DNA of 39,022 bases from Octopus sinensis (lineage: Eukaryota): assembly GCF_006345805.1 (NCBI RefSeq), contig NW_021835719.1:1-39022 (forward strand), written 5' to 3'. Of the stretch, positions 6,158-36,260 are shown one piece after another. The notes beneath the pieces are model-generated. The model was not told where the DNA came from. It searched no databases and saw nothing but the letters and a program-made list of their open reading frames with translations. Made by a program: the position numbers and the translations under genes. The first letter of the stretch is position 1; each line of letters opens with the position of its first letter.

Positions 6158-6555
6158 GGCAGTTTTTTCTAGCGGTGTCATATGAAATTGTCACCCATAA
6201 TTATAACCCTAGTATCGATCTATTGCATTTCAATCTGTTTTAGGGTTAGGATTGTATATGGGGGGAAGGTATCTTTTTTTCTTCACAAATGTAAATAAAC
6301 CCAATCTGTTTCTTAAACGAGGGACATATTCGTACGGCACAGAATGTTTTGTACCTCAATGGACGTCATTGATTAGTTGAAATTGCAGAAATTGAAAAAA
6401 AACAACAACAAATATCTTACAAACTATAGAATTTTCTCAATAAAGCCAAGAGAAAAAGATGTTTCATAAACACATTCTACCAGTATACGAAGTTTAAAAG
6501 TGTTTAGTTACGTGGAAATTATTTTAAAAAGCTGCTGTTCAAACCAAAAAGATCC
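6158..6555 (+). mobile_element. Dispersed non-autonomous element family E, copy 1 (class uncertain)
   Basis: Colinear with 30702-31094 from GGCAGTTTTTTCTAGCGG to AAAGATCC, with an internal TTAGGGTTAGG. A partial 3' copy lies at ~6812-6887. Confidence 0.75.
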
Positions 6556-6577
6556 ATATATATATATATATATATAT

Positions 6578-6718
6578 CATCATCATCATCGTTTAACGTC
6601 CGTTCTCCATGCTAGCATGGGTTGGACGGTTCGACCGGGGTCTAGGAAGCCAGGAGGCTGCACCAGGCTCCAGTCTGATTGGCAGTGTTTCTACAGCTGG
6701 ATGTCCTTCCTAACGCCA
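6578..6718 (-). mobile_element. 5'-truncated RTE-type 3' tail with (GAT)n end
   Basis: Reverse complement of the end of the RTE copy at 10982-12073; (TA)n on both sides. Confidence 0.85.
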
Positions 6719-7284
6719 ATATATATATATACAAGGTTGGCCAAAAGTCACCCGACAGTAAAGAAAATTCCATAAACACTGTGTATTGACTCGAATGGGA
6801 AAATATGTCGCTCAGTATACAAAGTTTAAAAGTGCTTAGTTACCTAGAAATTATGTTAAAAACTGGTGTTCAAACCGCAAAGATCTCATCTAGGTTTTTG
6901 GAGGTGTTTATGAGGTGATATCCATATGTAGCCAGAAACGTTTCTGTGTGGGGCAAGGCCATTGAATTTCAGGCTTCTGCCACTAGAAGCCACTTGATGC
7001 GATACTCAGGCATCAGTCAGCCAACCGGCATCTTTGAGTGTCGTCCTATTACCTTGTGGTGCATCTTTGTTTTGCGGGGCTTCTCCCCTGTTCATCAAGT
7101 TTTGCAATGGCTGAAATGAAGGAGCAGCGTGTTTCCATCAAATTCTGTTTTCTGCTGGAGAAAATGGCAACCGAAACAGCTGTCATGCTCCAAACAGCTT
7201 ACAAGGACACTGCCATGATGCCATGAGCAAAACACAAGTTCCTGAGTGGATTTCATGCTTTTCGAACGGTCCCTTGTCACTTAA

Positions 7285-8268: not shown

Positions 8269-8746
8269 TTAAGGACCAAACCTCATTCAGGGCAGCCATC
8301 GAGCTCCCTAATGAATGAAAACATCATGAAAATTCATGAACTGATTTTGGGAGACAGGTCACCGAACAATTGACCAAACTTGTTGATATGACGGGTGAGT
8401 CCTTGAGCTCCCGTCAACGGATCTTGAGCAAGGAATTGCAAATGAGAAGTGTTGCAGCCAAATTTATGCTTCACTTGCTCACAGAAGATCAAAAGCAGTC
8501 ATGGTTGAATGCATTTCGTGAACTGAAAGAGCAGCTGGAAGTCAATCGCTATCTTTTATCGAAGGTCACCAATAGTGACAAAAGCAGGTGCTACAGAATT
8601 TGCAGATGTGGAAGAGGTGAAGAAAAATATGATGGATTCTTCAAGAGGCATCACTTTGCCAGTGTTCCAGAACTGCTTTGAATAGAGGAAAACGCGTCTG
8701 GATTAATGCTTTGCTTCAAATGGGGATACTTTGAAGGTGATAAAAC

Positions 8747-8880
8747 AATAATAATAATAATAATTTATTCTTTTTATTGGCCACAAGGGCTGACACACAT
8801 GATTAGAAAACATAAAGGGACAAAACAGGACGAAAAGTTACAAAGGGTTTTGTCCGTTTGTGAAAAAAATTGTGTAAAAA
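8747..8880 (-). mobile_element. 3' end of a retroposon with an (ATT)n tail
   Basis: Minus strand ends AGCCCTTGTGGCCAATAAAAAGAATAA-(ATT)n, resembling the family C end AGCCCCTTGTGGGCAATAAAGAAAT. Confidence 0.5.
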
Positions 8881-8887
8881 CAGTTTA

Positions 8888-9508
8888 GTCCTGGCTAAGA
8901 AGGAATATATTCACAGACATGACAGAGTTGGAACCTACATACACTGGAAGCTATGCCAACATTATGGAATAACAACAGAAAAAAGATGGTTTAGGCACAC
9001 ACCAGAAAAGGTCACAGAAAATGAGAAAGCAACCATACTCTGGGATATGCCGATACACACAGATAGAGAAATTAAGGCCAACAGACCAGATATAGTTGTC
9101 AGAGATCATGAAGAAAAAAATGCTTTCTCTAATGATGTATCAATACCGGCTGATGACGACGTGTCTCTAAAAGAAATGGAGAAACTCTCAAAATACAAAG
9201 ACCTGGAAATAGAGGTAACTAGAATGTGGAATCTGAAAACAGAAACAATTCCTATCATAGTAGGTGCATTAAGTATAATAAAAAAAAACATTCAGACAAA
9301 TACATAACAAAAACACCAGGACTTACAAACACATATAACATACAGAACATTGCACTACTAGGCACTGCACACATCCTACGCAGAACACTTTCCATACAAT
9401 AACCATCAGAGCATCACAAACAAATCCAGCACATACCACAAACCCAAGGCACACAGAGCTGCGCTCGGTAGTGAAGTGAAAGTATGCTATAAAAATAAAA
9501 AACTACTG
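8888..9508 (+). mobile_element. 5'-truncated R4/Dong-clade non-LTR retrotransposon (restriction-like endonuclease domain plus 3' UTR)
   Basis: LAKKEYIHRHDRVG...ENEKATILWDMPIHTDREIKANRPDIVV...DVSIP...KEMEKLSKYKDLEIEVTRMW...IPIIVGAL, then after a frameshift IALLGTAHILRRTLSIQ-stop (9400-9402). This carries the RHD and PD-(D/E)xK hallmarks of RLE elements. Confidence 0.88.
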
Positions 9509-10850: not shown

Positions 10851-10980
10851 AAGAGAGAGAGAGAGAGAGAGAGAGAGATACATTGCGCATGCACATACAC
10901 TTGTGTAAATATACATACATACATACATACATATATACACATATTAATATATATTAATATATATATATATGTATATATAT
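10095..10980. repeat. Degenerate (TG)n, (TA)n and (GA)n tract
   Basis: Directly visible. TGTGTAAAATAGTG occurs near 10212 and 10405 (~190-bp local duplication). Confidence 0.9.
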
Positions 10981-10981
10981 A

Positions 10982-12073
10982 TTTGGGCAAAATTCAGAGA
11001 GCTCTTACCTCTGCTGGTGACAAAAGGCCTCTCGCACAGAGTGAAAGGCAGACTGTATGATGCGTGTGTACGAACAGCCATGCTACATGGCAGTGAAACA
11101 TGGGCCGTGACTGCTGAGGATATGAGTAAGCTCGCAAGAAATGAAGCCAGTATGCTCCGATGGATGTGTAAATGCCGGTACTCACACTCGGCAGAGTGTA
11201 AGTACCTTGAGAGAAAAGCTGGACCTAAGAAGCATCAGTTGGTGTGTGCAAGAGAGACGATTGCGCTGGTATGGTCATGTGGCGAGAATGGATGAAGATA
11301 GTTGTGTGAAAAAGTGCCACACCCTAGCGGTTGAGGGAACCTGTGGAAGAGGCAGACCCAGGAAAACCTGGGACGAGGTGGTGAAGCACGACCTTCGAAC
11401 TTTAGGTCTCACTGAGGAAATGACTAGAGACCGAGTCCTCTGGAAGTATGCTGTGCGCGAGAAGACCCGGCAGGACAAGTGAGTCCACAACCCGTGGCCT
11501 TCTACTTGGGATGGATCCACCTACGTATGCATACCTTCCCTTCTTGGGACACAAAACTCTACTTGTCAAGACCTGTTGAGGCAAGTGAGGATCAGAATCG
11601 AAATCAATCAATGGAAATTGCAGATGTGTTACCAGTGCCGGTGGCATGTCGAAACTCTACTTGTGAAGACCCGTTGAGGCAAGTGAGGATCAGAATGGAA
11701 ATCGCTCAATGAAATTGCAGATGTGGTTACCAGTGCCGGTGGCATGTAAGAGAACCTTCCGTTTCGCGACCATTGCCAGCACGCCCCGTTTCGTGTCCGT
11801 TGCTAGCCTCGCCTGGCCCTTGTGCCGGTGGCACATAAAATGCACCATCCGTTCGTGGCTGTTTGCCAGCTCTGTCTGGCACCTGTGCGGGTGGCACGTA
11901 AAAAGCACCCACTACACTCACGGAGTGGTTGGCGTTAGGAGGGCATCCAGCCGTAGAAACAAACTGCCAGATTTGACTGGGCCTGATGAAGCCTTCTGGC
12001 TTCACAGACCCCAGTAGAACCGTCCAACCCATGCTAGCATGGAAAACGGACGCTAAACGACGATGATGATGAT
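10982..12073 (+). mobile_element. 5'-truncated RTE-clade LINE: ORF2 C-terminus, long 3' UTR and (GAT)n tail
   Basis: WAKFRELLPLL...KGRLYDACVRTAMLHGSETW...RRLRWYGHVARM...GRGRPRKTW...RDRVLWK, with one frameshift near 11170 and a stop at 11480-11482. The UTR has a 98-bp direct duplication (11554 and 11652). Flanked by (TA)n. Confidence 0.92.
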
Positions 12074-12809: not shown

Positions 12810-13647
12810 CACACACAAACACATATATATCACTTACATTATACACACAAATTTCTTTCCACACATACATTGTTTTTCTTATGCCAATTATATTAATATA
12901 AATCATATAAATTATATATACCTAATTTCAAGTGTGTATATATGCGTGTATATATATATGTGTTTGTGTGTGTATAAACACAAATATATTTATATATATG
13001 TGTGTGTGAGTGCGTGTGTATATGTGTGTCTGCATATCTATATATGTATGTATATATATATGCACACATATATATACATATCTTTTTAATTTTATATACA
13101 CCTTCAATATTGATATAAAGTATGAATATGCATTTCCATAAAAATATATATAATTTTTCATAAGTATATGTTTGTGTGTGTATATATATAATTACATGTT
13201 CATCTATACATTTCTACACACACACACATACATGTGTGTATATATATATATATGTGCACATACATACACATACATATATATATGTATGTATATATATGCA
13301 AGTATATGTGTCTACATATATGTTTGTGTGTGTGTCTATATATATACTATATATACACATACACATGTATTCATACATGCATATACACAAATATAGGAAG
13401 ATATAAAGATACATACAAATACATGCACATTTACACACACACACACACATATAAATACAGACGCATATATTTCTATACTCACAAACACATGCACATATAT
13501 ACAACATACATACACACACACACATATATACATACATACACATATATACATACATATACATACATACATATATATACATATACATATATATATATATATA
13601 CATACATACATATATATATATATATACATACATACATATACATACAC

Positions 13648-13678
<31 letters not shown>

Positions 13679-13907
13679 CATACATACATATACATACATA
13701 CATACACATACATACCTACACATCATACATACACATACATACATATACATACATACATACACATAATACATACCATACATACATACATACATATACATAT
13801 ATATATATAATATATATATATATATTATATATACATACATATATAACATACATATATATACATACATATACATACATACATATACATACATACATACATA
13901 TATATAT
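12074..13907. repeat. (TA)n/(CA)n/(TACA)n/(GA)n microsatellite-dominated region
   Basis: Directly visible, with short unique interruptions. Confidence 0.85.
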
Positions 13908-14170
13908 CATCATCATCATCATCATCGTTTAACGTCCGCTTTCCGCGCTAGCACGGGTTGGACGGTTTGAACCGGGTCTGGGAGCCAGGGGCCGCACCAG
14001 GCTCCAGTCTGAATCTGGCAGAGTTTCTACGGCTGGATGCCCTTCCTAACGCCACCACTCCGTGAGTGGATTGGGTGCTTTTTACGTGCCACCTGCACAG
14101 GGCCGGAGGGTCCGGCATCGTCACGATCGGTTCGAGCATTTTAACGTGTCGCGGCACATGGGCAACGAGG
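13908..14170 (-). mobile_element. RTE-type 3' tail with (GAT)n end, forming the 3' end of the array-bearing composite
   Basis: GGTGGCACGTAAAAAGCACCC...GGCGTTAGGAAGGGCATCCAGCCGTAGAAAC...GGACGTTAAAC(GAT)n, homologous to 11890-12073. Confidence 0.88.
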
Positions 14171-14966
14171 TCCGGGGTACTTTGGGATCCAGGGTACTTT
14201 GGGGATCCGGGGTACTTAGAATGATAGGGGTATGTGGAATTGCTGCAGAAAGCAGCCCGGGTCTTTGTAGTCACAGCATTTCATCACTGAGTAACGTAAT
14301 TAGGTAGAGGAAAGAAATACAGATATTCTAGAGTTGAGTTGGGAGGGGGAGGCCAGTTGAGGCGGGTAATATAGGAGGGCAACCAGTGGGGAAGGTTGGG
14401 GTAAGGAGGACGATGGCAGGAAGGGTTGGTGTAGGTTCCTAAGAAATAAAGACATTCGTTATCGTCACTGAGTAACGTTATTAGGTAGAGGAAAGAATAC
14501 AGATATTCGAGAGTTGAGTTGGGAGAGGGGGGGTCCAGTTGAGGCGGGTAATATAGGGGAGCAACCAGTGGGGAAGGTTGGGGTAAGGAGGAACGATGGC
14601 AGGAAGGGTTGGTGTAGGTTCCTAAGAAATAAAAAACAAGGATATTACGAGGCGGGAGGGTGCTAAAGGGGATAGTCGGAATGAGGCAGTGTCAGGAGGA
14701 AGCATAAGATCGGTGGCAGTTGATGAGCTATGGCGCTAGCAGCTTGTCTTTTACAGTGAAAGCATATGAGGAGAAGGGGTAGTGGGGGGAGGGGAGGGAG
14801 TAGAGCGTACCCGTGTAGATGAGTAAGGCGTATCCGGTGTAGATGGTGAGGACAAGGTATACTGGTATTGGTGGTGGGAGGTGAGGAACAGTGTTCACCG
14901 GTATTGGTGGTGGGGGTGAGAACAGTGTTCATCGGTATTGGTGTGGTGGGGTGTGGGGGCGTGGCC
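14171..14966 (-). other. G-rich (plus strand) body joining the RTE tail to the tandem array, with internal tandem repeats
   Basis: 3 x ~18 bp (14171-14218), 2 x 181 bp (starts at 14284 and 14465) and 3 x ~31 bp (14865-14945). No microsatellite or TSD breaks it from the tail or the array. Confidence 0.65.
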
Positions 14967-17900
14967 ACCGCCAATGGCTGAGATGAGAGAATGGGGAAGA
15001 GATGGGAAGAGATAGGATTACGGCTAGGTGGCGTTGGGTAGCCTGGCCTAAGGTTAAATTTTGTAGAGAGAGAGATAGAACGATAAATCAAGTTATGGCG
15101 AAGGCTTGAAAGTAGCCTAAAAGGTTAAATTTTCGTAACAATGTATGAAGAAAGTAGTACAACGAATAAATAGTAAGATAAATTTTTAAGAACTTGCTGC
15201 GGACATCGAACGGGAGTTGAAATTGAATTGGGAATTTAAATTATAGAATCGTAATGGTGAGAGGAGGAAAAAAGACCGCCAATGGCTGAAAGATGAGAAG
15301 AGATGGGAAGAGATGGGAAGAGATAGGATTACGGCTTGAGGTAGCCTGGCCTAAGGTTAAATTTTGTAGAGAGAGAGATAGAACGATAAATCAAGTTATG
15401 GCGAAGGCTTGAAAGTAGCCTAAAAAGGTTAAATTTTCGTAACAATGTATGAAGAAACGTAGTAACAACGAATAAAATAGTAAGATAAATTTTTAAGAAC
15501 TTGCTGCGGACATCGAACGGGAGTTGAAATTGAATTGGGAATTTAAATTATAGAATCGTAATGGTGAGAGGAGGAAAAAAGACCGCCAATGGCTGAAAGA
15601 TGAGAAGAGATGGGAAGAGATGGGAAGAGATAGGATTACGGCTTGAGGTAGCCTGCCTAAGGTTAAATTTTGTAGAGAGAGAGATAGAACGATAAATCAA
15701 GTTATGGCGAAGGCTTGAAAGTAGCCTAAAAGGTTAAATTTTCGTAACAATGTATGAAGAAACGTAGTAACAACGAATAAAATAGTAAGATAATTTTTAA
15801 GAACTTGCTGCGGACATCGAACGGGAGTTGAAATTGAATTGGGAATTTAAATATAGAATCGTAATGGTGAGAGGAGGAAAAAAGACCGCCAATGGCTGAA
15901 AGATGGAAGAGATGGGAAGAGATAGGATTACGGCTTGAGGTAGCCTGGCCTAAGGTTAAATTTTGTAGAGAGAGAGATAGAACGATAAATCAAGTTATGG
16001 CGAAGGCTTGAAAGTAGCCTAAAAGGTTAATTTTTCGTAACAATGTATGAAGAAACGTAGTAACAACGAATAAAATAGTAAGATAAATTTTTTAAGAACT
16101 TGCTGCGGACATCGAACGGGAGTTGAAATTGAATTGGGAATTTAAATTATAGAATCGTAATGGTGAGAGGAGGAAAAAGACCGCCAATGGCTGAAAGATG
16201 AGAAGAGATGGGAAGAGATGGGAAGAGATAGGATTACGGCTTGAGGTAGCCTGGCCTAAGGTTAAATTTTGTAGAGAGAGATAGAACGATAAATCAAGTT
16301 ATGGCGAAGGCTTGAAAGTAGCCTAAAAGGTTAATTTTCGTAACAATGTATGAAGAAACGTAGTAACAACGAATAAAATAGTAAGATAAATTTTTAAGAA
16401 CTTGCTGCGGACATCGAACGGGAGTTGAAATTGAATTGGGAATTTAAATTATAGAATCGTAATGGTGAGAGGAGGAAAAAAACCGCCAATGGCTGAAAGA
16501 TGAGAAGAGATGGGAAGAGATGGAAGAGATAGGATTACGGCTTGAGGTAGCCTGGCCTAAGGTTAATTTTGTAGAGAGAGAGATAGAACGATAAATCAAG
16601 TTATGCGAAGGCTTGAAAGTAGCCTAAAAGGTTAAATTTTCGTAACAATGTATGAAGAAACGTAGTAACAACGAATAAAATAGTAAGATAAATTTTTTAA
16701 GAACTTGCTGCGGACATCGAACGGGAGTTGAAATTGAATTGGGAATTTAAATTATAGAATCGTAATGGTGAGAGGAGGAAAAAGACCGCCAATGGCTGAA
16801 AGATGGAAGAGATGGGAAGAGATAGGATTACGGCTTGAGGTAGCCTGGCCTAAGGTTAATTTTGTAGAGAGAGAGATAGAACGATAAATCAAGTTATGGC
16901 GAAGGCTTGAAAGTAGCCTAAAAGGTTAAATTTTCGTAACAATGTATGAAGAAACGTAGTAACAACGAATAAAATAGTAAGATAAATTTTTAAGAACTTG
17001 CTGCGGACATCGAACGGGAGTTGAAATTGAATTGGGAATTTAAATTATAGAATCGTAATGGTGAGAGGAGGAAAAAGACCGCCAATGGCTGAAAGATGAG
17101 AAGAGATGGGAAAGATGGGAAGAGATAGGATTACGGCTTGAGGTAGCCTGGCCTAAGGTTAAATTTTGTAGAGAGAGAGATAGAACGATAATCAAGTTAT
17201 GGCGAAGGCTTGAAAGTAGCCTAAAAGGTTAAATTTTCGTAACAATGTATGAAGAAACGTAGTAACAACGAATAAAATAGTAAGATAAATTTTTAAGAAC
17301 TTGCTGCGGACATCGAACGGGAGTTGAAATTGAATTGGGAATTTAAATTATAGAATCGTAATGGTGAGAGGAGGAAAAAGAAACCGCCAATGGCTGAAAG
17401 ATGAGAAGAGATGGGAAGAGATGGGAAGAGATAGGATTACGGCTTGAGGTAGCCTGGCCTAAGGTTAAATTTTGTAGAGAGGAGATAGAACGATAAATCA
17501 AGTTATGGCGAAGGCTTGAAAGTAGCCTAAAAGGTTAAATTTCGTAACAATGTATGAAGAAACGTAGTAACAACGAATAAAATAGTAAGATAAATTTTTA
17601 AGAACTTGCTGCGGACATCGAACGGGAGTTGAAATTGAATTGGGAATTTAAATTATAGAATCGTAATGGTGAGAGGAGGAAAAAAGACCCGCCAATGGCT
17701 GAAAGATGAGAAGAGATGGGAAGATTATGGATTACGGCTTGAGGTAGCCTGGCCTAAGGTTAAATTTTGTAGAGAGAGAGATAGAACGATAAATCAAGTT
17801 ATGGCGAAGGCTTGAAAGTAGCCTAAAAGGTTAAATTTTCGTAACAATGTATAAGAAGAACGTAGTAACAACGAATAAAATAGTAAGATAAATTTTTAAG

Positions 17901-20900
17901 AACTTGCTGCGGACATCGAACGGGAGTTGAAATTGAATTGGGAATTTAAATTATAGAATCGTAATGGTGAGAGGAGGAAAAAGACCGCCAATGGCTGAAA
18001 GATGAGAAGAGATGGGAAGAGATGGGAAGAGATAGGATTACGGCTTGAGGTAGCCTGGCCTAAGGTTAAATTTGTAGAGAGAGAGATAGAACGATAAATC
18101 AAGTTATGGCGAAGGCTTGAAAGTAGCCTAAAAGGTTAAATTTTCGTAACAATGTATGAAGAAACGTAGTAACAACGAATAAAATAGTAAGATAAATTTT
18201 TAAGAACTTGCTGCGGACATCGAACGGGAGTTGAAATTGAATTGGGAATTTAAATTATAGAATCGTAATGGTGAGAGGAGGAAAAAAGACCGCCAATGGC
18301 TGAAAGATGAGAAGAGATGGGAAGAGATGGGAAGAGATAGGATTACGGCTTGAGGTAGCCTGGCCTAAGGTTAAATTTTGTAGAGAGAGAGATAGAACGA
18401 TAAATCAAGTTATGGCGAAGGCTTGAAAGTAGCCTAAAAGGTTAAATTTTCGTAACAATGTATGAAGAAACGTAGTAACAACGAATAAAATAGTAAGATA
18501 AATTTTTAAGAACTTGCTGCGGACATCGAACGGGAGTTGAAATTGAATTGGGAATTTAAATTATAGAATCGTAATGGTGAGAGGAGGAAAAAAGACCGCC
18601 AATGGCTGAAGATGAGAAGAGATGGGAAGAGATAGGATTACGGCTTGAGGTAGCCTGGCCTAAGGTTAAATTTTGTAGAGAGAGAGATAGAACGATAAAT
18701 CAAGTTATGGCGAAGGCTTGAAAGTAGCCTAAAAGGTTAAATTTTCGTAACAATGTATGAAGAAACGTAGTAACAACGAATAAAATAGTAAGATAAATTT
18801 TTAAGAACTTGCTGCGGACATCGAACGGGAGTTGAAATTGAATTGGGAATTTAAATTATAGAATCGTAATGGTGAGAGGAGGAAAAAAGACCGCCAATGG
18901 CTGAAAGATGAGAAGATGGGAAGAGATGGGAAGAGATAGGATTACGGCTTGAGGTAGCCTGGCCTAAGGTTAAATTTTGTAGAGAGAGAGATAGAACGAT
19001 AAATCAAGTTATGGCGAAGGCTTGAAAGTAGCCTAAAAGGTTAAATTTTCGTAACAATGTATGAAGAAACGTAGTAACAACGAATAAAATAGTAAGATAA
19101 ATTTTTAAGAACTTGCTGCGGACATCGAACGGGAGTTGAAATTGAATTGGGAATTTAAATTATAGAATCGTAATGGTGAGAGGAGGAAAAAGACCGCCAA
19201 TGGCTGAAGATGAGAAGAGATGGGAAGAGATGGGAAGAGATAGGATTACGGCTTGAGGTAGCCTGGCCTAAGGTTAAATTTTGTAGAGAGAGAGATAGAA
19301 AGATAAATCAAGTTATGGCGAAGGCTTGAAAGTAGCCTAAAATTTAAATTTTCGTAACAATGTATGAAGAAACGTAGTAACAACGAATAAAATAGTAAGA
19401 TAAATTTTAAGAACTTGCTGCGGACATCGAACGGGAGTTGAAATTGAATTGGGAATTTAAATTATAGAATCGTAATGGTGAGAGGAGGAAAAAAGACCGC
19501 CAATGGCTGAAAGATGAGAGAGATGGGAAGAGATGGGAAGAGATAGGATTACGGCTTGAGGTAGCCTGGCCTAAGGTTAAATTTTGTAGAGAGAGAGATA
19601 GAACGATAAATCAAGTTATGGCGAAGGCTTGAAAGTAGCCTAAAAGGTTAAATTTTCGTAACAATGTATGAAGAAACGTAGTAACAACGAATAAAATAGT
19701 AAGATAAATTTTTAAGAACTTGCTGCGGACATCGAACGGGAGTTGAAATTGAATTGGGAATTTAAATTATAGAATCGTAATGGTGAGAGGAGGAAAAAAG
19801 ACCGCCAATGGCTGAAAGATGAGAAGAGATGGGAAAGATGGGAAGAGATAGGATTACGGCTTGAGGTAGCCTGGCCTAAGGTTAAATTTTAGAGAGAGAG
19901 ATAGAAGATAAATCAAGTTATGGCGAAGGCTTGAAAGTAGCCTAAAAGGTTAAATTTTCGTAACAATGTATGAAGAAAACGTAGTAACAACGAATAAAAT
20001 AGTAAATATAATTTTTAAGAACTTGCTGCGGACATCGAACGGGAGTTGAAATTGAATTGGGAATTTAAATTATAGAATCGTAATGGTGAGAGGAGGAAAA
20101 AGACCGCCAATGGCTGAAAGATGAGAAAGATGGGAAAGATGGGAAGAGATAGGATTACGGCTTGAGGTAGCCTGGCCTAAGGTAAATTTTGTAGAGAGAG
20201 AGATAGAACGATAAATCAAGTTATGGCGAAGGCTTGAAAGTAGCCTAAAAGGTTAAATTTTCGTAACAATGTATGAAGAAACGTAGTAACAACGAATAAA
20301 ATAGTAAGATAAATTTTTAAGAACTTGCTGCGGACATCGAACGGGAGTTGAAATTGAATTGGGAATTTAAATTATAGAATCGTAATGGTGAGAGGAGGAA
20401 AAAGACCGCCAATGGCTGAAAGATGAGAAGAGATGGGAAGAGATAGATTACGGCTTGAGGTAGCCTGGCCTAAGGTTAAATTTTGTAGAGAGAGAGATAG
20501 AACGATAAATCAAGTTATGGCGAAGGCTTGAAAGTAGCCTAAAAGGTTAAATTTTCGTAACAATGTATGAAGAAACGTAGTAACAACGAATAAAATAGTA
20601 AGATAAATTTTTAAGAACTTGCTGCGGACATCGAACGGGAGTTGAAATTGAATTGGGAATTTAAATTATAGAATCGTAATGGTGAGAGGAGGAAAAAAGA
20701 CCGCCAATGGCTGAAGATGAGAAGAGATGGGAGAGATGGGAAGAGATAGGATTACGGCTTGAGGTAGCCTGGCCTAAGGTTAAATTTTGTAGAGAGAGAG
20801 ATAGAAAGATAAATCAAGTTATGGCGAAGGCTTGAAAGTAGCCTAAAAGGTTAAATTTTCGTAACAATGTATGAAGAAACGTAGTAACAACGAATAAAAT

Positions 20901-23900
20901 AGTAAGATAAATTTTTAAGAACTTGCTGCGGACATCGAACGGAGTTGAAATTGAATTGGGAATTTAAATTATAGAATCGTAATGGTGAGAGGAGGAAAAA
21001 AGACCCGCCAATGGCTGAAAGATGAGAAGAGATGGGAAGAGATGGGAAGAGATAGGATTACGGCTTGAGGTAGCCTGGCCTAAGGTTAAATTTTGTAGAG
21101 AGAGAGATAGAACGATAAATCAAGTTATGGCGAAGGCTTGAAAGTAGCCTAAAAGGTTAAATTTTCGTAACAATGTATGAAGAAACGTAGTAACAACGAA
21201 TAAAATAGTAAGATAAATTTTTAAGAACTTGCTGCGGACATCGAACGGGAGTTGAAATTGAATTGGGAATTTAAATTATAGAATCGTAATGGTGAGAGGA
21301 GGAAAAAAGACCGCCAATGGCTGAAAGATGAGAAGAGATGGGAAGAGATAGGATTACGGCTTGAGGTAGCCTGGCCTAAGGTTAAATTTTGTAGAGAGAG
21401 AGATAGAACGATAAATCAAGTTATGGCGAAGGCTTGAAAGTAGCCTAAAAGGTTAAATTTTCGTAACAATGTATGAAGAAACGTAGTAACAACGAATAAA
21501 ATAGTAAGATAAATTTTTAAGAACTTGCTGCGGACATCGAACGGGAGTTGAAATTGAATTGGGAATTTAAATTATAGAATCGTAATGGTGAGAGGAGGAA
21601 AAAAGACCGCAATGGCTGAAAGATGAGAGAGATGGGAAGAGATGGGAAAGAGATAGGATTACGGCTTGAGGTAGCCTGGCCTAAGGTTAAATTTTGTAGA
21701 GAGAGAGATAGAACGATAAATCAAGTTATGGCGAAGGCTTGAAAGTAGCCTAAAAGGTTAAATTTTCGTAACAATGTATGAAGAAACGTAGTAACAACGA
21801 ATAAAATAGTAAGATAAATTTTTAAGAACTTGCTGCGGACATCGAACGGGAGTTGAAATTGAATTGGGAATTTAAATTATAGAATCGTAATGGTGAGAGG
21901 AGGAAAAAGACCGCCAATGGCTGAAAGATGGAAGAGATGGGAAGAGATGGGAAGAGATAGGATTACGGCTTGAGGTAGCCTGGCCTAAGGTTAAATTTTG
22001 TAGAGAGAGAGATAGAACGATAATCAAGTTATGGCGAAGGCTTGAAAGTAGCCTAAAAGGTTAAATTTTCGTAACAATGTATGAAGAAACGTAGTAACAA
22101 CGAATAAAATAGTAAGATAAATTTTTAAGAACTTGCTGCGGACATCGAACGGGAGTTGAAATTGAATTGGGAATTTAAATTATAGAATCGTAATGGTGAG
22201 AGGAGGAAAAAAGACCGCCAATGGCTGAAAGATGAGAAGAGATGGGAAGAGATAGGATTACGGCTTGAGGTAGCCTGGCCTAAGGTTAAATTTTGTAGAG
22301 AGAGAGATAGAACGATAAATCAAGTTATGGCGAAGGCTTGAAAGTAGCCTAAAAAGGTTAAATTTTCGTAACAATGTATGAAGAAACGTAGTAACAACGA
22401 ATAAAATAGTAAGATAAATTTTTTTAAGAACTTGCTGCGGACATCGAACGGGAGTTGAAATTGAATTGGGAATTTAAATTATAGAATCGTAATGGTGAGA
22501 GGAGAAAAAACCGCCAATGGCTGAAAGATGAAAGAGATGGGAAAGATGGGAAGAGATAGGATTACGGCTTGAGGTAGCCTGGCCTAAGGTTAAATTTTGT
22601 AGAGAGAGAGATAGAAAGATAAATCAAGTTATGGCGAAGGCTTGAAAGTAGCCTAAAAAGGTTAAATTTTCGTAACAATGTATGAAGAAACGTAGTAACA
22701 ACGAATAAAATAGTAATATAATTTTTAAGAACTTGCTGCGGACATCGAACGGGAGTTGAAATTGAATTGGGAATTTAAATTATAGAATCGTAATGGTGAG
22801 AGGAGGAAAAAAGACCGCCAATGGCTGAAAGATGAGAAGAGATGGGAAGAGATGGGAAGAGATAGGATTACGGCTTGAGGTAGCCTGGCCTAAGGTTAAA
22901 TTTTGTAGAGAGAGAGATAGAACGATAAATCAAGTTATGGCGAAGGCTTGAAAGTAGCCTAAAAGGTTAAATTTTCGTAACAATGTATGAAGAAACGTAG
23001 TAACAACGAATAAAATAGTAAGATAAATTTTTAAGAACTTGCTGCGGACATCGAACGGGAGTTGAAATTGAATTGGGAATTTAAATTATAGAATCGTAAT
23101 GGTGAGAGGAGGAAAAAAGACCGCCAATGGCTGAAAGATGAGAGAGATGGGAAGAGATGGGAAGAGATAGGATTACGGCTTGAGGTAGCCTGGCCTAAGG
23201 TTAAATTTTGTAGAGAGAGAGATAGAACGATAAATCAAGTTATGGCGAAGGCTTGAAAGTAGCCTAAAAGGTTAAATTTTCGTAACAATGTATGAAGAAA
23301 CGTAGTAACAACGAATAAAATAGTAAGATAAATTTTTAAGAACTTGCTGCGGACATCGAACGGGAGTTGAAATTGAATTGGGAATTTAAATTATAGAATC
23401 GTAATGGTGAGAGGAGAAAAAAGACCGCCAATGGCTGAAAGATGAGAAGAGATGGGAAGAGATGGGAAGAGATAGGATTACGGCTTGAGGTAGCCTGGCC
23501 TAAGGTTAAATTTTGTAGAGAGAGAGATAGAACGATAAATCAAGTTATGGCGAAGGCTTGAAAGTAGCCTAAAAGGTTAAATTTTCGTAACAATGTATGA
23601 AGAAACGTAGTAACAACGAATAAAATAGTAAGATAAATTTTTAAGAACTTGCTGCTGGGACATCGAACGGGAGTTGAAATTGAATTGGGAATTTAAATTA
23701 TAGAATCGTAATGGTGAGAGGAGGAAAAAGACCGCCAATGGCTGAAAGATGAGAAGAGATGGGAGAGATGGGAGAGATAGGATTACGGCTTGAGGTAGCC
23801 TGGCCTAAGGTTAAATTTTGTAGAGAGAGAGATAGAACGATAAATCAAGTTATGGCGAAGGCTTGAAAGTAGCCTAAAAGGTTAAATTTTCGTAACAATG

Positions 23901-24605
23901 TATGAAGAAACGTAGTAAAACAATAAAATAGTAAGATAATTTTTAAGAACTTGCTGCGGACATCGAACGGGAGTTGAAATTGAATTGGGAATTTAAATTA
24001 TAGAATCGTAATGGTGAGAGGAGGAAAAAAGACCGCCAATGGCTGAAAGATGAGAAGAGATGGGAAGAGATGGGAAAGATATAGGATTACGGCTTGAGGT
24101 AGCCTGGCCTAAGGTTAAATTTTGTAGAGAGAGAGATAGAACGATAAATCAAGTTATGGCGAAGCTTGAAAGTAGCCTAAAAGGTTAAATTTTCGTAACA
24201 ATGTATGAAGAAACGTAGTAACAACGAATAAAATAGTAAGATAAATTTTTAAGAACTTGCTGCGGACATCGAACGGGAGTTGAAATTGAATTGGGAATTT
24301 AAATTATAGAATCGTAATGGTGAGAGGAGGAAAAAAGACCGCCAATGGCTGAAAGATGAGAAGAGATGGGAAGAGATGGGAAGAGATAGGATTACGGCTT
24401 GAGGTAGCCTGGCCTAAGGTTAAATTTTGTAGAGAGAGAGATAGAACGATAAATCAAGTTATGGCGAAGGCTTGAAAGTAGCCTAAAAAGGTTAAATTTT
24501 CGTAACAATGTATGAAGAAACGTAGTAACAACGAATAAAATAGTAAGATAAATTTTTAAGAACTTGCTGCGGACATCGAACGGGAGTTGAAATTGAATTG
24601 GGAAT
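14967..24605. repeat. Tandem array (satellite) of ~32 monomers of 293-308 bp
   Basis: The anchor AATGGCTGA recurs at 14973, 15281, 15588, 15891, 16186 ... 24038, 24344. Differences are mainly 1-bp indels plus one or two copies of GAGATGGGAA. The plus strand is purine-rich. Confidence 0.98.
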
Positions 24606-24743
24606 ATATATATATATATACATACATATATACATACATATACATACATACATATACATACATACACACACACATATATATATATATTACACATACATAA
24701 TACATACATATACATCATACATATACATACATACACACCACAT

Positions 24744-24785
<42 letters not shown>

Positions 24786-25258
24786 TAATATATATATATA
24801 TACATACATATATACATACTATATAATATGATTATACACACACAGATAGACATTAGGTTGCAGTTGGAATGACTTAACCTCTGAAGATAAAGAAGAAAGA
24901 ATGGCCGCGAAACAGAAAGAACGGCAATGAAAAAGGATGGCTGTATTATCTACTGGGGCAATAAAGAAACTTACATTGAGACAAATGCACACACACACAC
25001 ACACACACACATGTATTATATAGTATGTATGTATATGTTTATAGGTGTGTGTGTATATGGTTGGGTCTAGGGCAGGTGGAGGTGTGTAGAATATGAGGCA
25101 ATTATGCATATAGGTGCAATGATGTGCATATGTTTAAGCATGCATCATTTGAATACATGCGTTCATATGTGCAGTCAGGCGTGTATATTTATGTATTGAC
25201 GCTGCCAATGCATTTAATCACATATAAAGCAACTAGGGTGTTGAAAGAAGAAAAAAAG

Positions 25259-27656: not shown

Positions 27657-28437
27657 GTATACATATATATATTTATATACATATACATACATGCAGAGTA
27701 AGCATGATAAATTCTAGGCTTAGGAAAAAGTTTGTGCACTGTGTTAAAGTAATGACCCGAATAAACACACACACACCACAAAAATATATAAAAATGTATC
27801 ATTTCAACATGTCATACAAACTTTTTCCTCAACCTAGTATATAGACATATATGTAGATGGGTGGTTAGATAGTTAGATAGGCAGAAAGACAGACAGATAG
27901 GAGAGGTATATAGATAGAAAGATATATAGATATATAAATAGAGACGGAGAGGCTGTTATCCGCAATGTTATAAAAATGACGCCCAATGAAGAAATCTGAT
28001 GCCGTACAATATTGGCCAAAGTGTGGTCATTGGAGCGGTGTTGTTTGATGATGTCATCATGGTCAAATAACATAGACTGTCCTATGAAAGGCGATACTGG
28101 TCGGTCAGTTGTGGGACATGCGATAGGAGAGAACCAGAAGTGACCTGTTTGGCCGCTGGGCTTAATTGCTTATGGTGTGGTGGTGGTGGTGGTCGTGGTG
28201 GAGTTGTTGGCAGTAATGGTGGTTTTACTGCCAATGGTTTCATATTTTCATTTACATATATATGTGTGTGTGTGTGTGTGTGTGTATATATACATTTACA
28301 TATATACATACATACATATATATATATGCATACATGTATTTACATTATTTATATATATGCATAAATATATATCATATAATATATATTTATACTATATACA
28401 TATATATATATAGATAGATATGTATGTATGTATGTAT

Positions 28438-28581
28438 CATATCATCGTTTAACGTCCACTTACCATGCTGGCATGGGTTGGATGATTTGACTGAGGACTG
28501 GCGAGCCAGATGGCTGCACACCAGGCTTCAATCTTGATCTGGCAGAGTTTCTACAGCTGGATTCCCTTCCTAACGCCAGCC
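28438..28581 (-). mobile_element. 5'-truncated RTE-type 3' tail
   Basis: Homologous to 6578-6718 with an almost identical truncation point; TA-rich flanks. Confidence 0.8.
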
Positions 28582-31136: not shown

Positions 31137-31580
31137 CATCATCATCATCATCATCGTTTAACGTTCGTTCTCCATGCTAGCATGGGTTGGACAGTTCGAC
31201 CGGGGATCTGGGAAGCCAGAAGGCTGCACCAGGCTCCAGTCTTATCTGGCAATGTTTCTACAGCTGGATGCCCTTCCTAACGCCAACCACTCCGAGAGTG
31301 TAGTGGGTGATTTTATGTGCCACCGACACAGGTGCCAGACGAGGCTGGCGAACGGCCACGCTCGGATGGTGTTTTTTATGTGCCACCGACACAGGTGCCA
31401 GACGAGGCTGGCAGACAGCCACGCTCGGATGGTGTTTGTTACGTGCCCACAGCACGGAGGCCAGTCAATGCGGTACTGGTTACGGCCACGTTCGGATGGT
31501 TTTCTTATGTGCCACCGGCACTGGTACCACAAGGATACAAATTCCATTGATGTTCATCTATTTTGATTTGGTTTGATTTG
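31137..31580 (-). mobile_element. RTE-type 3' UTR fragment with ~58-bp internal tandem repeats
   Basis: TGTGCCACCGACACAGGTGCCAGACGAGGCTGGC is repeated (~31317 and ~31379). (GAT)n tail; homologous to 11690-12073. Confidence 0.85.
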
Positions 31581-33273: not shown

Positions 33274-33700
33274 TAAACATATATATATTCATACACAAAC
33301 ACAACACACACATATATATATACATACACACAATATAAATGTATAAATATTTATATATATTTGTATAAGTGTATATTCCTATAGTAACATATGCAAAAAC
33401 ATATAGCTCCTTCTCTGTGTTTGTGTGTGTATATATATATATATATGTACTCACACACATACACAATTATATGTACTCACACACATACACAATTATATGT
33501 ACTCACACACATACACAATTATATGTACTCACACACATACACAATTATATGTACTCACACACGTGCCCATTTGCTTATGTTAGTAAAGACATAAACATAT
33601 AAATACATAAACATATATATATACACACACACACATGCACATGTATGTATATGTGTGGCTATGTGTGTGTGTCTATGAGTGTGTGTGTGTGTGTGTGTGT
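32200..33700. repeat. Microsatellite-dominated region, including a perfect 26-bp minisatellite at 33442-33561
   Basis: TATATGTACTCACACACATACACAAT x ~4.6, within (TA)n/(CA)n. Confidence 0.85.
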
Positions 33701-35569: not shown

Positions 35570-35715
35570 ACATATATAGATGGACACATGGATAGATGAG
35601 CAATAGATACACACACAGATAGAGAGATAAAGAGATAGAGAGAGAGAAAGACTGATTAACTGACAGACAGATAGATAGATATATAGATAGATTGACCAAG
35701 AGACAGACAGACTGC

Positions 35716-35805
<90 letters not shown>

Positions 35806-36260
35806 GATAGATAGACATATAGATAGATGGATGGATAGATAGATAGATAGATAGATAGATAAACAGATAGATAGATAGATACATAGATAAATAGATTACA
35901 GGTAAATAGGTAGACAGAGAGATAGAAAGACAGACAGATAGATAGATTGACAGAGAGATGGACAGATAGGTAAAGTACATAGAGAGAGATGCATAGATAG
36001 ATAAACAGAGAGACAGATAGATTGATAGATAGACAGTGATATATAGATAGATACATAGATAAATAGATTACAGGTAAATAGGTAGACAGAGAGATAGAAA
36101 GACAGACAGATAGATAGATTGACAGAGAGATGGACAGATAGGTAAAGTACATAGAGAGAGATGCATAGATAGATAAACAGAGAGACAGATAGATTGATAT
36201 ATAGATAGATAGATAGATAAATAGATTACAGGTAAATAGTTAGACAGTCAGATAGACAGA
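35570..36260. repeat. (GATA)n/(GACA)n tract with a ~160-175-bp higher-order repeat
   Basis: ATAGATTACAGGTAAATAG recurs near 35891, 36064 and 36221. Confidence 0.9.

What the first reader, a model, noticed from the sequence alone, without database searches (positions are those of the whole stretch)
13908..24605. A satellite growing out of the 5' end of an RTE-tailed element: one 10.7-kb unit bracketed by (TA)n
Seen, minus strand 5'->3': (TA)n, then [A+B] x ~31, then A', a ~800-bp body, an RTE-type 3' tail, (GAT)n and (TA)n. A is ~260 bp and B is ~42 bp (CTTTTTTCCTCCTCTCACCATTACGATTCTATAATTTAAA). The last copy A' is diverged (GGCTAGGTGGCGTTGGGTAGCC versus GGCTTGAGGTAGCC on the plus strand) and runs without a break into the body. 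No tRNA head and no recognisable ORF. Inference: either a non-autonomous, Pol-III-headless passenger of RTE machinery whose 5' module is reiterated like a monomer promoter array, or a satellite caught at birth from an element's 5' end. This is the strongest candidate for an undescribed system in the window.
Basis: partly seen in the sequence, partly recalled or inferred. Interest (0 to 1): 0.8.

Follow-up and report, generated by a model that had tools for sequence, protein, structure and literature searches.

The report
Tandem array on an RTE-tailed retroelement
In an octopus-type genome, 32 near-identical 306-base repeats sit directly against a non-coding element that ends in the tail of an RTE jumping gene. 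It is probably a new example of the known way that mobile elements give rise to satellite DNA, but whether the whole block moves could not be tested.

Summary
On the minus strand, 13908-24605 reads: (AT/ACAT)n, a truncated monomer, 30 full 306-bp monomers, a diverged last monomer (A'), a 0.8-kb non-coding body, a 256-nt tail, (ATG)6, (AT/ACAT)n.

The tail is a real LINE tail. It is shared with a 5'-truncated RTE-like LINE in the same window and with Octopus vulgaris copies, and it keeps the family's 3' hairpin through compensatory changes.

There is no tRNA or Rfam match, no ORF, no hammerhead core and no significant RNA fold. T-runs in every monomer would stop Pol III.

The split into A and B is only bookkeeping for a truncated end monomer. 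A 10-bp-deletion variant recurs every third monomer, which points to growth by unequal exchange in three-monomer blocks.

All five tail-bearing insertions in the window are bracketed by TA-type microsatellite, and none lies at the tail/body or body/array joins. This favours one insertion unit, 5'-truncated inside a monomer.

No second copy of the body or monomer could be searched, because none of the collections I could search held more than traces of octopus sequence. Mobility of the composite and any promoter role therefore remain untested.

Satellites derived from transposable elements are well known, so this is a new variant of a known kind. Interest is moderate.

The parts
13487..13907 (.). 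Flanking compound microsatellite (ACAT/AT)n on the 3' side of the unit
   Evidence: TRF and sequence. It ends in ATATATAT directly before the (CAT)6.
13908..13925 (-). Terminal (ATG)6 microsatellite of the element, read as (CAT)6 on the + strand
   Evidence: Sequence. The same (ATG)n end is present in all tails that reach their 3' end, in the window and in O. vulgaris.
13926..14163 (-). RTE-type 3' tail. It includes two copies of the family's ~63-bp unit and the conserved hairpin at 13943-13956.
   Evidence: 80-88% identity to four other copies in the window, one of them the 3' end of a LINE with an RT C-terminus, and to O. vulgaris L004 and ENA L005. The hairpin pairing is kept by an AU->GC double change and a UA->UG change.
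14164..14966 (-). Non-coding body, pyrimidine-rich on the sense strand, built of nested duplications (18, 182, 24 and 34 bp)
   Evidence: Unique in the window. Repeats from TRF. No Pfam domain and no protein relatives. The + strand purine fraction is 0.664 against a background of 0.514 +/- 0.045.
14967..15274 (-). A' (m01): the diverged monomer at the inner edge of the array
   Evidence: 7 substitutions plus an 8-bp insert and other indels against the consensus.
15275..24605 (-). Monomers m02-m32 of the 306-bp repeat; m32 is truncated at about position 268
   Evidence: The 10-bp-deletion variant occurs in m04, 07, 10, 13, 19, 22 and 25, all 1 mod 3.
24606..24829 (.). Flanking compound microsatellite (AT)n(ACAT)n on the 5' side of the unit
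   Evidence: TRF and sequence. It has the same motif mix as the other flank.
10985..12073 (+). Context: a 5'-truncated RTE-like LINE carrying the same tail, the candidate partner family
   Evidence: RT C-terminal ORFs at 10969-11482. The best named relative is an Octopus vulgaris protein at 81% identity. Tail homology spans 11816-12073. It is bracketed by TA/TATG microsatellite.

Best explanation
The block 13908-24605 is most likely one retroelement insertion on the minus strand of an octopod genome.

Its 3' end is a 256-nt tail borrowed from an RTE-like LINE. The tail has a conserved hairpin followed by (AUG)n, which is the kind of signal such LINE enzymes use to pick their template.

The enzyme would prime on a nick in an (AT) run of a compound microsatellite. 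It would then copy the RNA through a 0.8-kb non-coding body into a region of 306-bp repeats, and stop inside a monomer (5' truncation).

The repeat region must already have held at least two copies in the source, because the order is A-[B-A]n-B-A'. It was then expanded and homogenised by unequal exchange, in blocks of three monomers, probably mostly in place.

So this is a tandem repeat carried by a transposable element and growing into a satellite-like array. It is not a SINE, not coding and not a ribozyme repeat. Any transcript through it must come from Pol II or from read-through.

Shown: the anatomy, the tail homology, the hairpin, the three-monomer periodicity and the bracket pattern. Inferred: that it is a single insertion, the reverse-transcription steps, and the timing of the expansion.
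For: - Tail homology to a LINE 3' end in the same window and in O. vulgaris.
- Eight tails share the hairpin CCAUG-CUAG-CAUGG. This copy keeps the pairing through one double change and one G-U change, and the G-U pair works only on the minus, sense strand.
- Of the 10 boundaries of the 5 tail-bearing insertions, 9 lie within 10 bp of an alternating purine-pyrimidine tract edge, and 8 lie within 3 bp. No such tract lies inside 13908-24605 or at 14163 or 14966.
- Both flanks are the same (ACAT)n(AT)n mix and would join seamlessly.
- m32 is truncated but not diverged, and no monomer relic lies beyond the microsatellite.
- Body and array share the same unusual strand bias, with purine fractions of 0.664 and 0.669.
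- The short monomers recur at lag 3.
- Tandem duplication next to the tail is a trait of this family: 63-bp x3.4, 98-bp x2, and 67-bp x2.4 in O. vulgaris.
- The tail and the array are not CpG-depleted, with observed/expected of 1.0 and 1.36.
Against: - No second copy of the body or monomer was found or could be searched, so linkage rests on a single locus.
- Monomer and body share no sequence similarity and no excess of shared 7-mers.
- Microsatellite covers 27% of the neighbourhood, so a bracket is less improbable here than elsewhere.
- In the O. vulgaris locus the three tails are not in TA tracts.
- At 10.7 kb the block is two to three times the length given for an octopus RTE in PMC9115989 (3.3-kb ORF plus ~600-nt UTRs), so most copies must have arisen after insertion.
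- The many 1-bp indels between monomers look like long-read noise, so copy number and junctions need read support.
Confidence: 0.5

Rival explanations
1. Chance neighbours. A 1.06-kb RTE-tailed element (tail plus body) inserted at the very edge of an existing 306-bp satellite array. The array owes nothing to the element.
For: No similarity between monomer and body. A diverged edge monomer is what ordinary satellite arrays show. Microsatellite tracts are so dense, at 27% cover, that an array end next to one is not rare.
Against: The insertion would need its 5' end exactly at the first base of the array with no microsatellite left there, whereas all four other insertions keep TA tracts on both sides. 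The array would itself have to sit as an island inside one compound microsatellite. The matched purine bias of body and array would be coincidence.
Confidence: 0.25
2. One-off retrocopy of a read-through transcript. Transcription began in a satellite array upstream of an RTE-tailed element at another locus, ran into the tail, and the whole RNA was copied here once. There is no family of such composites.
For: The structural evidence is the same as for a single insertion. No copy of the body was seen in the ~22 kb of other octopod DNA obtained.
Against: A 10.7-kb template is long for this machinery. The three-monomer periodicity and near-identity of copies fit local unequal exchange just as well. 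With one locus it cannot be told apart from the main explanation.
Confidence: 0.1
3. Assembly artefact. The array length, or one of its junctions, was produced by the assembler from noisy long reads.
For: Small indels between monomers are frequent, about 4 per pair, and show no periodicity, as sequencing noise would.
Against: The 10-bp variant and the substitution variants are ordered (lag 3 and lag 9), which collapsed or invented repeats would not give. The junctions are clean.
Confidence: 0.07

Closest known systems
SINE-derived and LINE-derived satellites (e.g. SINE-derived satellites of squamate reptiles, PMC10702118; review PMC12692304)
   Same: A piece of a retroelement is repeated head to tail and behaves like a small satellite. 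Arrays are modest in size.
   Different: In those cases the monomer itself is recognisable SINE or LINE sequence. Here the monomer matches neither the tail nor the body, and the array is still attached to an element with an intact tail.
SVA / LAVA composite retrotransposons of hominoids (from my own knowledge)
   Same: Non-autonomous, with no Pol III head. They are built of modules that include a variable tandem-repeat block, are moved by a LINE enzyme, and are often 5'-truncated.
   Different: SVA uses a poly(A) end and L1, its repeat units are 35-50 bp, and the repeat block is central. Here the end is a stringent RTE-type tail, units are 306 bp, and the block is at the 5' end. Dispersed copies were not shown.
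Monomer arrays in the 5' UTR of mouse L1 (from my own knowledge)
   Same: Tandem monomers of about 200-300 bp at the 5' end, a diverged or partial inner monomer joined to non-repeated sequence, and truncation inside monomers.
   Different: L1 monomers are proven promoters of an autonomous coding element. Here there is no ORF and no evidence of promoter activity.
Satellite-like arrays carried by Helentrons and other elements in bivalve molluscs (PMC7492417) and by the 3' UTRs of plant LTR retrotransposons (PMC7004042)
   Same: Short arrays inside a mobile element serve as seeds that spread and expand into satellites.
   Different: The carrier classes are different (rolling-circle DNA transposons and LTR elements), and the position in the element is different.
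Metazoan retrozymes: tandem 150-300-bp repeats with hammerhead ribozymes (PMC7761336)
   Same: Monomer size, low G+C, and invertebrate host.
   Different: No hammerhead core (CUGANGA) in the consensus monomer, no Rfam ribozyme match, and no significant fold.

Membership tests
LINE-dependent non-autonomous retroelement (RTE partner) | 3' tail homologous to the 3' end of a partner LINE | tested here: met
   256 nt at 80.5% identity to the tail of the LINE fragment at 11816-12073, and 80-83% to O. vulgaris copies.
LINE-dependent non-autonomous retroelement (RTE partner) | Same terminal microsatellite and conserved 3' hairpin as the partner | tested here: met
   (ATG)6 end. The hairpin is kept with one compensatory change and one wobble change.
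LINE-dependent non-autonomous retroelement (RTE partner) | Partner LINE belongs to the RTE clade | tested here: inconclusive
   Only the last ~170 aa of the RT protein are present and Pfam finds nothing. The best named relative is an unnamed O. vulgaris protein. The RTE call rests on the C-terminal motif (RLRWYGHV...GRGRPRKTW) as I remember it, and on microsatellite ends being typical of RTE (PMC9115989).
LINE-dependent non-autonomous retroelement (RTE partner) | Several dispersed copies with target-site marks | not testable with these tools
   No octopus DNA in the searchable collections: the abundant tail 21-mer is absent from viral and genome contigs. The protein route was empty.
SINE | Pol III promoter head (tRNA, 5S or 7SL derived) | tested here: not met
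   No tRNA, no Rfam match, and no A or B box in the sense monomer. T6 and T4 runs in every monomer would stop Pol III.
Satellite DNA | Head-to-tail monomers with high identity and higher-order periodicity | tested here: met
   32 copies at 96% including indels, with few substitutions. A three-monomer pattern is present.
Satellite DNA | Many or long arrays making up a measurable share of the genome | not testable with these tools
   There is only one array in 39 kb, and none in the ~22 kb of other octopod DNA.
Monomeric promoter array (L1-like) | Monomers drive transcription in the sense of the element | not testable with these tools
   Only generic CCAAT and TATA-like words at chance frequency. 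No expression data are available.
Retrozyme / ribozyme-bearing tandem repeat | Self-cleaving ribozyme in each monomer | tested here: not met
   No Rfam ribozyme, no CUGANGA in the consensus, and fold z-scores of +0.28 and -0.78.
SVA-like composite | Copies that differ in repeat number at different loci | not testable with these tools
   Same reason as for dispersed copies.

The most novel reading that the evidence does not exclude
Octopods carry a family of RTE-driven composite retroelements, analogous to SVA or to L1 with its monomers. Its 306-bp 5' monomers would act as a Pol II promoter array, vary in number between insertions, and seed satellite arrays wherever they land.
Probability: 0.15. 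Interest if true: 0.65.

Novelty: new variant of a known kind. Interest (0 to 1): 0.4.

Why it matters
If the array really belongs to the element, this locus shows an intermediate between an interspersed repeat and a satellite. An intact LINE-type tail is still attached, and the host group is one whose genomes expanded through LINEs and SINEs.

It would give a concrete case for asking how satellites are seeded and spread in cephalopods. It would also bear on how elements without a Pol III head get transcribed for RTE-mediated copying.

If the two are only neighbours, the locus is an ordinary small satellite next to an ordinary insertion.

Tried and rejected
Searches for other copies:
- Exact look-ups of window ORFs found nothing.
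- A protein search with the ORF across the body/A' junction found nothing.
- A composite of all body and monomer pseudo-ORFs found nothing.
- A 22-mer from the monomer gave only chance 22-nt matches in metagenome and viral contigs.
- A 24-mer from the monomer gave nothing in genome contigs.
- The abundant tail is also absent from the viral and genome contigs, so the viral and genome-contig negatives say nothing about copy number. The protein routes were probably too sparse in octopod sequence as well: the abundant RT C-terminus found only 9 proteins.
- A literature search for the actual sequence strings returned only unrelated primers.

Ideas rejected:
- Body and monomer are diverged relatives: the alignment score is below shuffles.
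- The right-hand (AT)n grew out of the monomer's own AT-rich stretch: no remainder of the monomer lies beyond it.
- Hammerhead, HDV-like or other structured RNA in the monomer: no evidence.
- Coding capacity: none.
- CCAAT and TATA-like words, and the lack of AATAAA on the sense strand, as evidence for a promoter: their counts are about what the base composition predicts.
Full report
**What is there**

TRF reports one array at 14967-24605, with period 305, 31.9 copies and 96% matches. Splitting at a conserved anchor gives 32 monomers with a 306-bp consensus.

Read on the minus strand, which is the sense of the tail, the order is:
- compound microsatellite
- a monomer lacking its first ~38-40 nt (m32)
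- 30 full monomers
- an 803-bp body
- a 238-nt tail
- (ATG)6
- compound microsatellite

B is the part missing from the truncated end monomer.

Differences between monomers are mostly 1-bp indels with no periodicity, which looks like long-read noise. Substitutions are few.

A 10-bp deletion (one AGATGGGAAG unit fewer) occurs in m04, 07, 10, 13, 19, 22 and 25. All of these are 1 mod 3, which has a chance of about (1/3)^6. A second variant recurs at a spacing of 9. The array has therefore grown or been homogenised in three-monomer blocks, as satellites do.

**The genome**

The only named relative of the RT fragment in the window is an Octopus vulgaris protein at 81% identity. The tail is found at 80-87% identity in an O. 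vulgaris chromosome segment and in an ENA contig. The window is octopod.

It is far richer in microsatellite than the O. vulgaris segment: alternating purine-pyrimidine tracts cover 27% against 2.8%.

**The tail**

The first ~256 nt of the unit match four other places in the window. One of these is the 3' end of a 5'-truncated LINE at 10985-12073, whose RT C-terminal ORFs lie just upstream. The tail is therefore truly LINE-derived.

The clade call (RTE) rests on the C-terminal motif as I remember it. It also rests on microsatellite 3' ends being typical of RTE (PMC9115989). Pfam sees nothing in the short fragment.

Eight tails share a hairpin, CCAUG-CUAG-CAUGG, about 25 nt before the (AUG)n. 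The unit's tail differs at three stem positions and keeps every pair. One change is AU to GC on both sides, and one is UA to UG. The UG pair exists only in RNA of the minus strand.

The tail is not CpG-depleted (observed/expected 1.0). It looks like a working tail of a distinct subfamily, not a decayed fragment.

**The body and the monomer**

Neither has an ORF with relatives, a Pfam domain, or a tRNA, 5S or 7SL head. There is no Rfam match, even at E<=5.

The monomer has no hammerhead core and no significant fold on either strand.

The sense strand of each monomer has a T6 run and two T4 runs, so Pol III could not cross the array.

Body and monomer are not alignable. They do share an unusual strand bias: purine fractions of 0.664 and 0.669 on the + strand, against a background of 0.514 +/- 0.045 and 0.479 for the tail.

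The body is itself a stack of small tandem duplications. Other tail-bearing copies also carry tandem units next to the tail: 63 bp x3.4, 98 bp x2, and 67 bp x2.4 in O. vulgaris. Tandem duplication is a habit of this family.

**Is it one unit?**

The strongest internal evidence is the bracket pattern. Each of the four other tail-bearing insertions is flanked directly, on both sides, by TA/TATG-type microsatellite.

Of the 10 boundaries of the five insertions, 9 lie within 10 bp of a tract edge and 8 within 3 bp. About 7% of positions lie that close to an edge. No tract lies anywhere inside 13908-24605, in particular not at the tail/body or body/array joins.

The two flanks carry the same (ACAT)n(AT)n mix and would join into one microsatellite. 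The outer monomer is cut at position ~268 yet is undiverged, and nothing beyond the microsatellite continues the monomer.

All of this is what a 5'-truncated, target-primed insertion into an (AT) run would leave. The order A-[B-A]n-B-A' cannot arise from a single copy by simple duplication without a further deletion. The source therefore probably already had at least two monomers.

**Limits**

- Microsatellite is so dense here that a bracket is not very rare.
- In the O. vulgaris segment, tails are not in TA tracts.
- At 10.7 kb the block is long for an RTE template, so most copies probably arose in place.
- Above all, I could not look at any other copy. Every route to other octopod DNA was empty. 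The control, the abundant tail, is also absent from the viral and genome contigs, so those negatives are uninformative.

**Verdict**

- Most likely (about 0.5): one RTE-tailed, headless, non-coding retroelement whose 5' repeat has expanded into a satellite-like array.
- Rivals: chance adjacency of an insertion and an older array (0.25), a one-off retrocopy of a read-through transcript (0.1), and assembly error (0.07).
- The promoter-array idea is possible but has no evidence.

**Comparison with what is known**

Satellites arising from SINEs, LINEs, LTR elements and Helitrons are well documented (PMC12692304, PMC10702118, PMC7004042, PMC7492417). SVA and mouse L1 monomers are close analogues in layout.

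The difference here is the combination of:
- a stringent RTE-type tail
- no Pol III head
- a 5' array of a monomer unrelated to the rest of the element
- a cephalopod host

That makes it a new variant of a known kind, of moderate interest until genome-wide copies are examined.

Noticed in passing
window 10985-12073 (+): A 5'-truncated RTE-like LINE. The RT C-terminus is split by a frameshift (ORFs 10969-11295 and 11141-11482). A 98-bp x2 duplication lies in the 3' UTR (11554-11747), followed by the same tail and (GAT)n. TA/TATG microsatellite flanks both sides.
   Followed up: partly
window 31137-31575 (-): A tail-bearing element with a 63-bp unit repeated 3.4 times (31311-31529). The same unit is present twice in the finding's tail and 2.4 times in O. 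vulgaris L004 4175-4330. The repeat number next to the tail therefore varies between copies.
   Followed up: partly
window 6568-6718 and 28436-28578 (-): Two tail-only copies of about 143 bp begin at the same base (TGGCGTTAGG). This is either a discrete mini-element or a preferred stopping point for reverse transcription.
   Followed up: no
whole window; L004 for comparison: Alternating purine-pyrimidine microsatellite tracts cover 27% of the window outside the unit but only 2.8% of a 20-kb Octopus vulgaris segment. In this window every LINE-tail insertion sits exactly between such tracts.
   Followed up: partly
window 35617-36226 and 33442-33562: A very long (AGAT)n tract of about 152 units, and a perfect 26-bp x4.7 repeat.
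   Followed up: no
window 6481-6560 and 6812-6892: An ~80-bp direct repeat at 88% identity lies on either side of the first tail-only copy.
   Followed up: no
window 8370-8681 and 8870-9307 (+): Two ORF remnants that look like transposon proteins from memory: a mariner-type N-terminus and the C-terminal part of a retroelement protein. Pfam finds nothing at E<=0.01.
   Followed up: no
window 14967-24605: About four 1-bp indels per monomer pair, without any periodicity, suggest uncorrected long-read errors in the assembly. True monomer identity is probably above 99%.
   Followed up: partly
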